Notes under the pieces: generated by a model
Databases searched by the model: none
Told to the model about the DNA's origin: nothing
The model's input: the letters and a program-made list of their open reading frames with translations, nothing else
Program-made: the position numbers and the translations under genes
NCBI GenBank assembly: GCA_037379345.1
Contig: CM074513.1
Coordinates: 60,367,195-60,431,194 of the forward strand
DNA: 64,000 nucleotides
DNA from: Perna viridis
Taxonomy: Eukaryota
Reading direction: 5' to 3'
Shown: in pieces, positions 26,064-29,000 of the stretch
Layout: each line of letters opens with the position of its first letter
Numbering within the stretch: the first letter of the stretch is position 1

Positions 26064-29000
26064 GTAAACATGATTTTGTATCCTAAACCTGATTTACAGA
26101 CGACGCGAACGGTTCGAGTATTCAATTTGCTTGCTTTAAAATGTGGTTTAAATGTATTTTTCCTGCTATTTGTGTCCTTGGTTGGATTTAACCATCAATG
26201 GACTGCATTCTGTATAGCTAATATTCGAACAATCTAGAATCGTTTTAACGTGACAAAATAGAAACCAAGTGGTTTATGTGACTTATGTCAAAGATGGAAT
26301 GTCCGCATAGTTCATACCACCCTTCCTTAAAGAGCGAAGATTGTGATCACTTAAGTTATGGAATTTAAAAGTCCTGTAAAATGGAGCTATATAGATCGGT
26401 TACATTCCATTTTGATGACAAAACCGAAGAAATTGCTGATTTTCACTTTCGTGGAATCTTGCAACTTTGAATGTGGTGCCGCCATCTTGAAATCTGAAAC
26501 TAGTATGATGTAAAAATAGTAACTAGTAGGATGCAATGATATGCACCAAGACCGAATTACAAACATATAAGGATTTACTTTATTTCTAAAAAGTGAATTT
26601 CCAAGTTTTCATGTTGCATGAGCTTGTCTGTTATACGTTGTATGAGCTCTTCAATATGTAGCATTTGACTTGTGCAAGCTTTTTCTTACTATACTCAGTT
26701 TTTATTTTTTTGGTCTGCTGTCTAACTGAAATTCTTGTCTTTTTTATTACTTACAATTAGTCTCTTCGAAATATTAAAAGGTTTACTTGGGTCTGTCAAT
26801 AATAATATAGCTCCAGTTAGTCATGATCCAAACTGTGATACATTTTACGTTTTACAATCTTAACACAAATGTTTGTGTTTTATTTTGCTGTATATTTACG
26901 ACCAGCCTTTGTTTTGTAGATTGAGGATGACTACAATTCCCTGGTTAAAAAGAACATTCAAACAGAGAACGATTACGATAACTGCAACACACAGTTACAA
27001 GATGTTCAAGCAAAATACGAAAAGGCAGAAAAACAGATTCAAGAGGTAGGATAAAGACCGTGTGATATTGCATTTTGTTGTCCTCTTTTCTTCTTTGACA
27101 CGAGTTTTGATATTTTGTAAGCGGAAAGGGAGAAAGAGTCGTATGATTTCATTTGTTCTATAAATTCTGAAATGACACTCTTGTAAGTTTCAAAAACGTA
27201 AAGGGAGGGGTGGGTGTACGCCCTCGGGCAGTATCAGAAACTCGTGTTATATATGGCTTTTTCAACACCGATAAACAAAACTGCTTTTGATAGCGCATGG
27301 CTTTTTAACAACTCTTTTAACATCTGGATTTCTTTCACATGTGTTTGATAATTAATTACTGTCTGTTTTACTATCTCCACACACGCGTGTGATGTGTATT
27401 GCTGTGGTAACAAATTACCGATTCATAATGTACTGTTACATGACGTCATCAATACCTGATATGGAAATGCAGTAAAGGAATGCAGCGCCAGTCAGAAGAT
27501 TACAACGTACATAGGCTGTGCTATCAATTATGTTGCACCCCGTTTAACGTCCATTTGTTTACATTATTATTCAAATTAGATAAATTGAAAATAAATACTA
27601 CTTAAGAAGTAAATAAAATATAAATCGATACAATAAATGACAATTAAGTTCTGACAAGTGCAAACTTTGCCTTTAGGATTATGTTGATGGAGAAGGAAGG
27701 ACAACGGATTTAACAATGAACGATTATAATCAATCAGAGAAGGATTTAACAATGAACGATTATAATCAATCAGAGAAGGATTTAATGGATCACATGCAAT
27801 TATCTCAAGATTCCGTCAGTTCCTATCAACTTTCTCAAGAGTCAGTGCATTCCAATGTATCACAGGATCTTACATCCGAACTTCTTGAGGGTGAAGTCAA
27901 TGAAACCGATAAACCAAAAGTTCGGAAGAAAAAGTCCGGTCCAAAAAAAGTTAAAAAGAAGAAAAGTGAAAACACAGGAGATGAAGCGGAAGAGGATAAA
28001 CCGAAGAAGAAAAAGAAAAAAGTTAAAATAACAAAGCGACCAGAACCGGAAGGGGGCAATGCACAGCCAAGTTTAATTAATCCTATGACGGAATTCGATC
28101 GTGTGATATACAGCAATGAACCTTTGTTTTCGGACTTAGACATGTCGGACAATGAAAACACAAATGACATGCCTGAACGACCGACCCGAGCGCCCCGCCC
28201 CGGGGGTGTCATGATCCCATGCCTTCAGTTAGGAATGCATTCAAATACAATGATAAAATTTGCGATTATTGGAAGCGAAATCCAAAACTTATTGCGGGTC
28301 TCATTAATTCGGGTATGGTTTCTGCATGAGTTTGTGCATGGCTTATATTTGTTGGTCTTAGAACGATTGAATAGTTGTCTCGCAGTTCAGTATTTATGTT
28401 AGTGAAAGATTTCTAAACATCGAGACATATAACTGCTACTTCATTTACTCGTGACATTATGAATAAATTTGGTCTTCTTGTATTCAATCGAAACCATTTT
28501 GTTCAAATTACCGAACATGTTTTAAATGTCAAATGAGCAATCAGATTTAATTTTAGACTGTTAGGATCCCGTGGTTATGATGAGAAATAATGCGTCTACA
28601 CGCATTTTGTATAAACAACATTACACGTCTATGTAATTATCCTATGTCAGTACCTATCCTAACTTTTTGATAGGTCTCTATCAACACTAACAAAAAATGA
28701 ACTTTCGCTACACTATTGAATTTTAAAATGGCAAAATATTAAACACTAAAAATAGACATCAAATCAATTAATTAGTTTGAAATTTCTGACGTCTGATTTA
28801 ACTCCGCAGTAGTGATAATTAGAACGAAATCCTTTACTCAAAGGAATTTACATACAATATTGCTGTAAGTTGGTTAATGCTTTCATGTAGGAATTCCCAT
28901 TATTCTTTATTAATGTTTATCAAATCTATCCTAAATATTTTACCCCTTTCACCTGAATTGACCTTCAAATATTTGAGATGCTGTACATTTAAAGACCATT

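What the first reader, a model, noticed from the sequence alone, without database searches (positions are those of the whole stretch)
27716..28312. Candidate molluscan counterpart of the atypical tropomyosin Tm1-I/C
Seen: a 199-codon exon between exon 2 and exon 1b has a phase-0 donor joining exon 3. It replaces the N-terminal coiled coil with a low-complexity region ([12 protein letters not shown] x2, SQ repeats, two poly-Lys tracts) ending [33 protein letters not shown]. Recalled, not searched: Drosophila Tm1-I/C ends its unique N-terminus with roughly YPGLAFGRSIFSSDTMMKFNIIRNELQNIMKNQLKR at the same junction. Established: Tm1-I/C binds kinesin-1 and oskar mRNA and forms intermediate-filament-like polymers. 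Inference: this kinesin/RNA-adaptor tropomyosin could be pan-protostome rather than insect-specific.
Basis: partly seen in the sequence, partly recalled or inferred. Interest (0 to 1): 0.92.

Follow-up and report, generated by a model that had tools for sequence, protein, structure and literature searches.

The report
Mussel counterpart of fly atypical tropomyosin
A mussel tropomyosin gene has an expressed alternative first coding exon that swaps the normal actin-binding head for a disordered tail ending in a short helix, and that helix is homologous to the kinesin-binding helix of the fly protein Tm1-I/C, so this isoform class, described in the literature only for fruit flies, is probably as old as the protostomes.

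Summary
Window 27716-28312 (+) is a 199-codon ORF with a phase-0 GT donor. It lies between tropomyosin exon 2 and exon 1b. Stranded RNA-seq joins 28312 to 33935 (exon 3) in two studies: 52 and 41 junction reads, about 1-6% of the reads entering exon 3.

The exon is conserved and already annotated as the N-terminus of RefSeq "tropomyosin isoform X" models in Mytilus, oysters and gastropods. An exhaustive profile search also finds it in an annelid, a nemertean and flatworms.

A profile built only from this exon, with no tropomyosin residues, has one significant hit in the whole PDB. That hit is Drosophila aTm1 (Tm1-I/C) in its kinesin complex (7BJS, E 6e-4), and the alignment ends exactly at the exon junction. 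Against arthropod isoforms hhalign gives 96% probability and P 1.3e-9.

The three fly residues I267, L271 and L279, shown to matter for Khc binding, are hydrophobic here (I185, I189, L197). AlphaFold2 predicts a disordered head and a helix that runs on into the coiled coil. The mussel's kinesin heavy chain site is 57/62 identical to the fly's.

Kinesin and RNA binding remain inferred, because the complex predictor was unavailable. The fly's low-complexity C-terminal tail is absent. The scan held no earlier report of this exon.

The parts
27716..28312 (+). Alternative first coding exon of the tropomyosin gene, 199 codons. The ATG is at 27716; a second in-frame ATG at 27752 corresponds to the Mytilus start.
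   Evidence: ORF and donor. Spliced to exon 3 in RNA-seq. 78-79% identical to the N-terminus of Mytilus RefSeq tropomyosin isoforms.
27707..27778 (+). Exact 36-nt tandem duplication encoding [12 protein letters not shown] twice. Mytilus orthologues have a single copy.
27716..27910 (+). Acidic Ser/Gln-rich low-complexity segment (residues 1-65, net charge -13) with the conserved LSQDS repeats.
   Evidence: AlphaFold2 predicts coil with low confidence (pLDDT about 40-55) in both models.
27911..28036 (+). Basic Lys-rich tract (residues 66-107, net charge +15). Candidate RNA-binding or nuclear-localisation region.
   Evidence: Composition. K-rich columns are conserved across molluscs. The function is inferred.
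28037..28141 (+). Spiralia-specific conserved blocks RPEPEGG (28037-28057) and [17 protein letters not shown] (28091-28141).
   Evidence: Invariant columns in alignments A1-A3. Short predicted helix at residues 126-131. Absent from arthropod N-termini.
28235..28312 (+). 26-residue helix-extension motif [26 protein letters not shown] (residues 174-199), homologous to Drosophila aTm1 256-281.
   Evidence: PDB profile hit to 7bjs_C. hhalign against arthropod isoforms. Predicted helix at 176-196, continuous with the coiled coil in the Mytilus edulis orthologue.
28313..33934 (+). Intron removed when the new exon joins exon 3 (GT..AG). It contains exon 1b.
   Evidence: Junction reads.
33935..34068 (+). 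Tropomyosin exon 3 ([45 protein letters not shown]), the common acceptor for exon 2, the new exon and exon 1b.
29426..29569 (+). Exon 1b (MSSKAAGGG...TIDT), the short-isoform start, for context.
   Evidence: Junction 29569 to 33935 has 131 and 269 reads.
26920..27045 (+). Exon 2 of the canonical long isoform, for context.
   Evidence: (loose-end consensus)
25950..26063 (+). Exon 1a ([38 protein letters not shown]), for context.

Best explanation
The stretch is a real alternative first coding exon of the mussel tropomyosin gene, used at a low level. Spliced in phase 0 to exon 3, it replaces the first 80 residues of canonical tropomyosin (two actin-binding periods and the head-to-tail overlap). 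In their place it puts about 165 residues of disordered, charge-segregated low-complexity sequence followed by a 21-26-residue amphipathic helix that extends the coiled coil N-terminally. All of that is shown. [quoted passage not shown] In the fly, this extension plus the next ~55 coiled-coil residues insert as a single antiparallel chain into the kinesin heavy chain tail dimer (Khc 855-911), and I267, L271 and L279 lie in the hydrophobic core. Those positions are I185, I189 and L197 here, and the mussel Khc site is 57/62 identical to the fly's. The most likely mechanism is therefore inferred, not shown: the isoform does not act as a head-to-tail actin-filament tropomyosin. [quoted passage not shown] My confidence is about 0.9 that the exon is real and homologous, and about 0.5 that it binds kinesin.
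For: ORF, donor and chance control. Splicing in two independent stranded RNA-seq studies plus one contig. Conservation as the N-terminus of annotated tropomyosin isoforms in bivalves and gastropods. The phase-0 donor sits after the final Arg in 8 other loci. The exon order (new exon, exon 1b, exon 3) is the same in Haliotis. The exhaustive profile search found 81 representatives at E<=1e-3, including an annelid, a nemertean and flatworms. The exon-only profile hits 7bjs_C (aTm1) as the sole significant PDB chain (E 6e-4), ending at the junction, and no canonical tropomyosin or other coiled coil is hit. hhalign of A3 against arthropod isoforms gives probability 96.4 and P 1.3e-9 over 26 columns at 50% identity. 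The fly structure and mutagenesis (I267A/L271A lowers Khc binding and oskar localisation) come from PMC8247599. AlphaFold2 gives a disordered head and one helix from residue 166 to the C-terminus in the M. edulis orthologue, and a helix at 176-196 in the window exon. The mussel Khc tail exon matches 7bjs_A at 57/62 residues.
Against: Only about 26 residues are alignable between Spiralia and arthropods. The rest of the N-terminus carries different conserved blocks. The mussel isoform keeps a full canonical C-terminal half, with five actin-binding periods and the normal C-terminal exons. It lacks the fly's low-complexity tail, so an actin-related role is not excluded. Position 271 is Ile in this mussel rather than Leu. 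Tissue of expression is unknown. The 5' end of the transcript was not mapped.
Confidence: 0.62

Rival explanations
1. The exon is real and its terminal helix is homologous to aTm1, but the conserved helix serves coiled-coil stability, antiparallel dimerisation or another partner. On this view the isoform is an actin-associated, non-polymerising tropomyosin, or is targeted to the nucleus or another compartment by its Lys-rich head. Kinesin binding would then be a fly or arthropod innovation.
For: The isoform keeps the complete canonical C-terminal 204 residues in many alternative-exon combinations. Upstream of the helix, Spiralia and arthropods conserve different blocks. In the fly the same surface is used for homodimerisation.
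Against: The residues conserved across phyla include the three hydrophobic core positions of the Khc interface. The Khc site itself is almost unchanged. Loss of exons 1-2 removes the overlap needed for cooperative actin binding; this last point rests on established tropomyosin biology, not on a test here.
Confidence: 0.3
2. The resemblance to Tm1-I/C is convergent or due to chance: any heptad-patterned helix placed before exon 3 would look similar.
For: The alignable stretch is short (26 residues), and the library-wide E-value for arthropods in the 1.84-billion-protein search would be above 0.1 (bit scores against the scale).
Against: Among 177,635 distinct PDB sequences, which include hundreds of coiled coils and all canonical tropomyosins, only aTm1 is hit. 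The hhalign P-value is 1.3e-9. The group consensus sequences are identical at 14 of 26 positions, including non-heptad positions (S-N-T at the N-cap, K, E, N). The gene, exon boundary and phase are the same in both groups.
Confidence: 0.05
3. The exon is transcriptional or splicing noise (an exonised intron fragment) with no protein product.
For: It is a minor share of the reads entering exon 3 (about 6% and 1%). No proteomic evidence was available.
Against: The reading frame, motif and donor phase are conserved across four spiralian phyla. Junction reads are reproducible across studies. The ORF is longer than in any of 100 shuffles.
Confidence: 0.03

Closest known systems
Drosophila melanogaster Tm1-I/C (aTm1; PDB 7BJG, 7BJN, 7BJS; PMC8247599, PMC5286366, PMC10948360)
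   Same: Both are products of the tropomyosin gene made with an alternative N-terminal exon joined to the exon that encodes canonical residue 81 onward. Both have a long disordered low-complexity head with Lys-rich tracts. Both have a helix extending the coiled coil just before the junction: 11/26 identical for the window against the fly, 14/26 between the group consensus sequences. The hydrophobic core positions I267, L271 and L279 are conserved as I, I and L.
   Different: The mussel isoform has no low-complexity C-terminal tail and no shortened rod; it continues through the normal exons 3-9. The head carries Spiralia-specific blocks ([24 protein letters not shown]) in place of the arthropod ELAKLRC...DYPGLAFG block. 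Kinesin binding, RNA binding and filament formation are untested.
Arthropod RefSeq 'tropomyosin isoform X' models with the KLRC...DYPGLAFGxSIFSSNTMMKFSIIKNELHNIMNVQLKR head (for example Penaeus, Procambarus, Hyalella, Strigamia, Stegodyphus, Cloeon, Tribolium)
   Same: Same architecture as the mussel isoform: atypical head, helix motif and a full canonical C-terminal half.
   Different: The sequence upstream of the 26-residue helix cannot be aligned with Spiralia. None of these has been characterised experimentally.
Short (low-molecular-weight) tropomyosins that start at exon 1b
   Same: Both use an internal alternative start that splices to exon 3. The mussel gene has such an exon 1b at 29426-29569, 1.1 kb downstream of the new exon.
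   Different: Exon 1b encodes about 48 residues of coiled coil that restore an N-terminal overlap for actin binding. The new exon encodes 199 residues, mostly disordered.

Membership tests
Tm1-I/C (aTm1)-type atypical tropomyosin | Encoded by the tropomyosin gene. A unique 5' coding exon replaces exons 1-2 and joins the exon for canonical residue 81 onward, in phase 0. | tested here: met
   Exon map. Junction reads 28312 to 33935. The fly junction R281|A282 comes from PMC8247599 and the 7bjs_C alignment.
Tm1-I/C (aTm1)-type atypical tropomyosin | Long, intrinsically disordered, low-complexity N-terminal domain. | tested here: met
   The Mytilus edulis orthologue model puts most of residues 1-164 below pLDDT 50. 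The window-exon model has no regular structure before residue 176 except a six-residue helix, at pLDDT mostly 43-63. Composition and charge blocks. No Pfam domain.
Tm1-I/C (aTm1)-type atypical tropomyosin | Helical extension motif directly before the shared coiled coil (fly residues about 256-281). | tested here: met
   The exon-only profile hits 7bjs_C at E 6e-4 and ends at the junction. hhalign gives probability 96.4 and P 1.3e-9. Predicted helix.
Tm1-I/C (aTm1)-type atypical tropomyosin | Hydrophobic residues equivalent to I267, L271 and L279, which form the core of the Khc-aTm1 triple coiled coil. | tested here: met
   These are window I185, I189 and L197 by the alignment. The role of the fly residues comes from PMC8247599.
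Tm1-I/C (aTm1)-type atypical tropomyosin | [quoted passage not shown] | not testable with these tools
The only evidence is that the receptor site is conserved: 57/62 identical to fly Khc in 7bjs_A.
Tm1-I/C (aTm1)-type atypical tropomyosin | Binds RNA or stabilises Khc-RNA binding and is needed for mRNA transport. | not testable with these tools
   Only a Lys-rich tract (net +15 over 42 residues) is seen.
Tm1-I/C (aTm1)-type atypical tropomyosin | Low-complexity C-terminal tail and shortened rod (the basis of intermediate-filament-like assembly in D. melanogaster). | tested here: not met
   Mytilus isoforms with this head end in the canonical C-terminal exons (...[13 protein letters not shown] or ...[10 protein letters not shown]), and these exons are present in the window at 44448-44935. 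AlphaFold2 gives a helix through to residue 392 of 393.
Canonical actin-binding tropomyosin (Pfam PF00261, long or short form) | An N-terminal coiled-coil end (exon 1a or 1b) able to overlap the C-terminus of the next molecule. | tested here: not met
   The isoform starts with the new exon. Neither exon 1a/2 nor exon 1b is included in the spliced form seen.
Canonical actin-binding tropomyosin (Pfam PF00261, long or short form) | Tropomyosin coiled-coil rod. | tested here: met
   Orthologous full-length isoforms carry PF00261 and match PDB tropomyosins over residues 191-388.

The most novel reading that the evidence does not exclude
[quoted passage not shown] It still operates in molluscs, annelids, nemerteans, flatworms and all arthropod groups. 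Tm1-I/C-type regulation of kinesin-1 and mRNA transport would then be a general invertebrate mechanism rather than a Drosophilidae peculiarity.
Probability: 0.4. Interest if true: 0.85.

Novelty: new variant of a known kind. Interest (0 to 1): 0.68.

Why it matters
The structural paper on the Khc-aTm1 complex describes aTm1 as 'present in Drosophilidae' (PMC8247599). I found no paper in the held library that reports it elsewhere.

The part of aTm1 that the fly work showed to be needed for kinesin binding and oskar transport turns out to be the one piece conserved from mussels to flies. It sits at the same exon boundary of the same gene. The kinesin site it binds is nearly invariant.

That changes the question from a fly curiosity to a candidate ancient cargo or regulatory adaptor of kinesin-1. 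It can be tested in spiralian eggs and embryos, where mRNA localisation is prominent, and in crustaceans and other arthropods.

It also explains a large set of unexplained 'tropomyosin isoform X' models in RefSeq.

Tried and rejected
- **Whole-exon searches:** Pfam and single-sequence PDB searches with the full exon gave only low-complexity noise.
- **Finding the kinesin tail:** a back-translated QIAKPIR pattern hit an unrelated locus on G000:C4. The true Khc gene splits that motif with an intron. A second pattern (EVDRIKEAV) found the gene on G000:C11.
- **Protein Atlas:** it was busy for the window sequence. For the Haliotis homologue it gave only sub-threshold hits (best 0.81; a HAP1_N cluster at 0.77), which I do not use.
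- **Cluster look-up:** a second look-up of unnamed representatives returned no names, so many of the 81 representatives remain without a taxon.
- **Encoding contigs:** the oyster and Aplysia isoforms were not on record.
- **Papers not held:** Cho et al. 2016 and Veeranan-Karmegam et al. 2016 could not be read, so their statements on conservation were not checked.
- **Joined exons:** Every step that needed motif and coiled coil together used the RefSeq Mytilus edulis orthologue (P0003) returned by a search.
- **5' end:** Read laying was limited to one call of 6 kb, so the 5' end of the exon and the candidate acceptor at 27676 could not be examined.
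Full report
**1. The observation**

Window 27716-28312 (+) is an ATG-initiated ORF of 199 codons, followed at once by GTATGG. The frame is stop-free for 241 codons (27677-28399). In 100 shuffles of the 64-kb window (GC about 34% locally) the longest stop-free stretch in six frames averaged 131 codons and never exceeded 218. The window contains no N.

- [12 protein letters not shown] occurs twice, from an exact 36-nt tandem duplication at 27707-27742 and 27743-27778.
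- LSQ-type repeats and two Lys tracts are present.
- The C-terminus reads ...[33 protein letters not shown].

By charge the exon falls into four parts:

| Residues | Character | Net charge |
|---|---|---|
| 1-65 | acidic, Ser/Gln-rich | -13 |
| 66-107 | Lys-rich | +15 |
| 108-165 | acidic, with conserved blocks | -6 |
| 166-199 | hydrophobic, helical end | +2 |

**2. The gene around it**

The window carries a tropomyosin gene on the + strand:

| Exon | Coordinates | Notes |
|---|---|---|
| 1a | 25950-26063 | MDAIKKK... |
| 2 | 26920-27045 | |
| new exon | 27716-28312 | |
| 1b | 29426-29569 | MSSKAAGG... |
| 3 | 33935-34068 | |
| alternative exons 4-9 | 36.6-44.9 kb | clusters |

The earlier notes s1-755841 and s1-755871 on this window describe the downstream alternative-exon clusters. 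My tblastn map agrees that they exist. RefSeq Mytilus models combine the new head with either set of alternative exons (P0003 against P0027).

**3. Expression and splicing**

I laid four runs on window 28090-34080; the operators' limit was 6 kb and one call. Two stranded RNA-seq runs from different studies show the joint 28312 to 33935 (GT..AG), with 52 reads at 29 start positions in X20 and 41 reads at 22 start positions in X21. One older contig (X1) carries the same joint.

- All reads have the first mate on the minus strand, as expected for a + strand RNA in a dUTP-type library.
- For comparison, exon 1b to exon 3 has 131 and 269 reads.
- Reads arriving at exon 3 from exon 2 number 713 and 3839. 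These are loose ends whose consensus matches 27014-27045.
- The new exon therefore supplies roughly 6% and 1% of the reads entering exon 3 in these two samples.
- Tissue is unknown because the run ids are coded.
- The 5' end of the exon lay outside the stretch I could lay.

**4. Conservation in Spiralia**

A word-indexed search with the stop-free ORF, scored on the exon only, found 56 proteins:
- Full-length RefSeq "tropomyosin isoform X" models carry it in Mytilus edulis, M. galloprovincialis, M. trossulus and M. californianus. These are 390-393 aa and 78-79% identical over the exon.
- It is also present in Magallana gigas, Ostrea edulis, Haliotis rufescens, Patella vulgata and Aplysia californica.
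- Many exon-sized ORFs from unannotated contigs match as well.

The alignment has five conserved elements:
- LSQDS repeats;
- a Lys-rich tract;
- RPEPEGG;
- (D/E)[17 protein letters not shown];
- [37 protein letters not shown].

In all eight other loci whose DNA I read, the last Arg codon is followed directly by GT. In Haliotis the exon order is again new exon, then an exon-1b-like exon, then exon 3.

I built a trimmed alignment entirely from DNA references, running from RPEPEGG to the last Arg (A3: 9 sequences, 94 positions, no tropomyosin residues). I ran it exhaustively against 1.84 billion representatives. It found 81 proteins at E<=1e-3 and 70 at E<=1e-10. Where the following sequence is present it is tropomyosin exon 3. 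Named members include:
- the annelid Paralvinella palmiformis;
- the nemertean Lineus longissimus;
- Schistosoma species and Trichobilharzia;
- the gastropod Biomphalaria.

Many others are unnamed contigs.

**5. The link to Drosophila Tm1-I/C**

The same exon-only profile searched against all PDB sequences gives one significant hit. It is 7bjs_C, "SD21996p", the aTm1 chain of the Khc-aTm1 complex (E 6e-4, 23 bits). The profile consensus [26 protein letters not shown] aligns to FSSDTMMKFNIIRNELHNIMNTQLKR, and the alignment ends on the last profile position (the untrimmed profile gave the same hit). No canonical tropomyosin and no other coiled coil in the PDB reaches E 10.

The construct is aTm1 252-334. 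Numbering the chain from that start reproduces I267, L271, T277, Q278 and L279 exactly as named in the paper, and puts the junction at R281|A282, where the paper says the region shared with classical isoforms begins. The window motif therefore maps with an offset of 82:

| Fly residue | T260 | K263 | F264 | I267 | E270 | L271 | N273 | L279 | R281 |
|---|---|---|---|---|---|---|---|---|---|
| Window residue | T178 | K181 | F182 | I185 | E188 | I189 | N191 | L197 | R199 |

Identity between the window and the fly is 11 of 26.

**6. Arthropods**

A search with the annelid protein, restricted to motif plus exon 3, brought in arthropod isoforms that cover the motif:
- decapods (Penaeus, Procambarus, Homarus, Panulirus);
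- the amphipod Hyalella;
- the barnacle Pollicipes;
- the ostracod Darwinula;
- the beetle Phyllotreta;
- Drosophila tropicalis;
- Trichinella, in a degenerate form.

Their sequence is ...DYPGLAFGxSIFSSNTMMKFSIIKNELHNIMNVQLKR|AEGEV....

A second search with the Penaeus head gave 642 proteins. Besides crustaceans these include the centipede Strigamia, the spider Stegodyphus, mayflies, an odonate, Hemiptera, Coleoptera, Lepidoptera, an orthopteran and a termite.

Profile-profile comparison of the mollusc exon-only alignment with eight full-length arthropod isoforms gives probability 96.4% and P 1.3e-9. It aligns 26 columns at 50% identity and ends at the junction on both sides.

The consensus 26-mers are [26 protein letters not shown] for Spiralia and FSSNTMMKFSVIKNELHNIMNVQLKR for arthropods. 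They are identical at 14 positions.

Upstream of the helix the two groups differ. Arthropods keep ELAKLRCxSxxTEVVAERxxRRCxDYPGLAFG, and Spiralia keep RPEPEGG and [17 protein letters not shown].

**7. Structure**

AlphaFold2 was run on the M. edulis orthologue with a 16-sequence alignment:
- Most of residues 1-164 fall below pLDDT 50.
- One uninterrupted helix runs from residue 166 to 392, with pLDDT 88-97.
- The helix starts 24 residues before the exon junction, which matches the fly crystal structures (ordered from residue 259; "extended by 20 unique residues").

The window exon folded alone gives a helix at 176-196 and a short helix at 126-131 in the EFDRVI block.

**8. What the fly work says the helix does (PMC8247599)**

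- aTm1 247-335 is the Khc-binding region.
- One aTm1 chain packs antiparallel against two Khc chains (855-923).
- I267, L271 and L279 in the unique extension lie in the hydrophobic core.
- The I267A/L271A double mutant strongly reduces Khc binding and oskar localisation.
- The triple mutant in the extension abolishes binding.
- The same paper states that aTm1 "is present in Drosophilidae".

PMC10948360 adds that Tm1 binds the conserved cargo-binding region of the Khc tail.

**9. The receptor in this mussel**

I located the kinesin heavy chain tail in the window's own genome at G000:C11, as locus L013. The exon encoding [71 protein letters not shown] aligns to fly Khc in 7bjs_A with 57 of 62 residues identical. 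It aligns almost as well to human kinesin-1.

**10. Interpretation**

Shown:
- The exon is real, expressed, spliced as proposed and conserved across four spiralian phyla.
- Its terminal helix is homologous to the aTm1 extension at the same exon boundary.
- The isoform class is arthropod-wide, not limited to Drosophilidae.

Inferred:
- The mussel isoform docks on kinesin-1 through this helix and the following coiled coil.
- The basic disordered head contacts RNA or other cargo.

The complex predictor was unavailable, so no computational binding test exists. The mussel isoform lacks the fly's low-complexity tail and keeps the whole canonical C-terminal half. Intermediate-filament-like assembly is therefore not supported, and an actin-related role cannot be excluded.

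**11. Novelty**

The exon is already present in RefSeq and UniProt gene models, including an oyster model, but only under generic tropomyosin names. I found no paper in the held library that links it to Tm1-I/C or reports aTm1 outside Drosophilidae. Two key 2016 papers could not be read.

I rate it a new variant of a known kind. It has the same head-helix module in a different overall architecture, and a far wider taxonomic range than published.

**12. Limits stated by the operators**

Joined sequence came only from database orthologues.

Noticed in passing
window 27707-27778: An exact 36-nt tandem duplication creates two in-frame start codons (27716 and 27752) and the repeated [12 protein letters not shown]. 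The four Mytilus species have one copy, so the duplication is recent in this lineage.
   Followed up: partly
window 27675-27716: A polypyrimidine tract plus AG at 27675-27676 would be an acceptor in frame with exon 2 (which ends at 27045 in phase 0). The Schistosoma (P0114) and Darwinula (P0180) gene models place exons 1a and 2 in front of the atypical exon. A 10-codon upstream ORF (ATG 27681 to TAA 27711-27713) also sits just before the start codon.
   Followed up: no
L002:3646-3978, L005:1176-1502, and Aplysia P0050: These homologues lack one residue in the tail of the helix motif (VS-NR in place of VSLKR). That shifts the heptad register by one just before the exon junction.
   Followed up: no
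G000:C11:4436248-4439273 (L013): The kinesin heavy chain tail of this mussel. The cargo-binding exon is nearly identical to fly and human. The autoinhibitory IAK motif is split by an intron (…AAQI | gtaagg), which is why a back-translated QIAKPIR pattern missed it.
   Followed up: partly
window 29372-29378: RNA-seq molecules pile up with ends at 29378, and a contig begins at 29372, about 50 nt upstream of the exon 1b ATG. This is probably the transcription start of the short isoform.
   Followed up: no
window 61686-62243 (-): This ORF has a reverse-transcriptase domain (RVT_1, E 1e-9) and is a retroelement fragment downstream of the tropomyosin gene. Other long ORFs (15808-16560 +; 48.6-50.7 kb -; 53863-54519 +) have no Pfam match above threshold.
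   Followed up: partly
window 36648-37522, 40768-41680, 43232-43920, 44448-44935: These are clusters of mutually exclusive alternative exons 4, 6, 8 and 9. Mytilus RefSeq models combine the atypical head with either series.
   Followed up: partly
P0182-P0187 (Trichinella): A degenerate copy of the motif (SSNVFMRFRLIQNEVYNIYHIFYKQ|AEAEV) precedes exon 3 in Trichinella tropomyosin models. This suggests the exon also exists in basal nematodes. The profile score alone is not significant (10-11 bits).
   Followed up: partly
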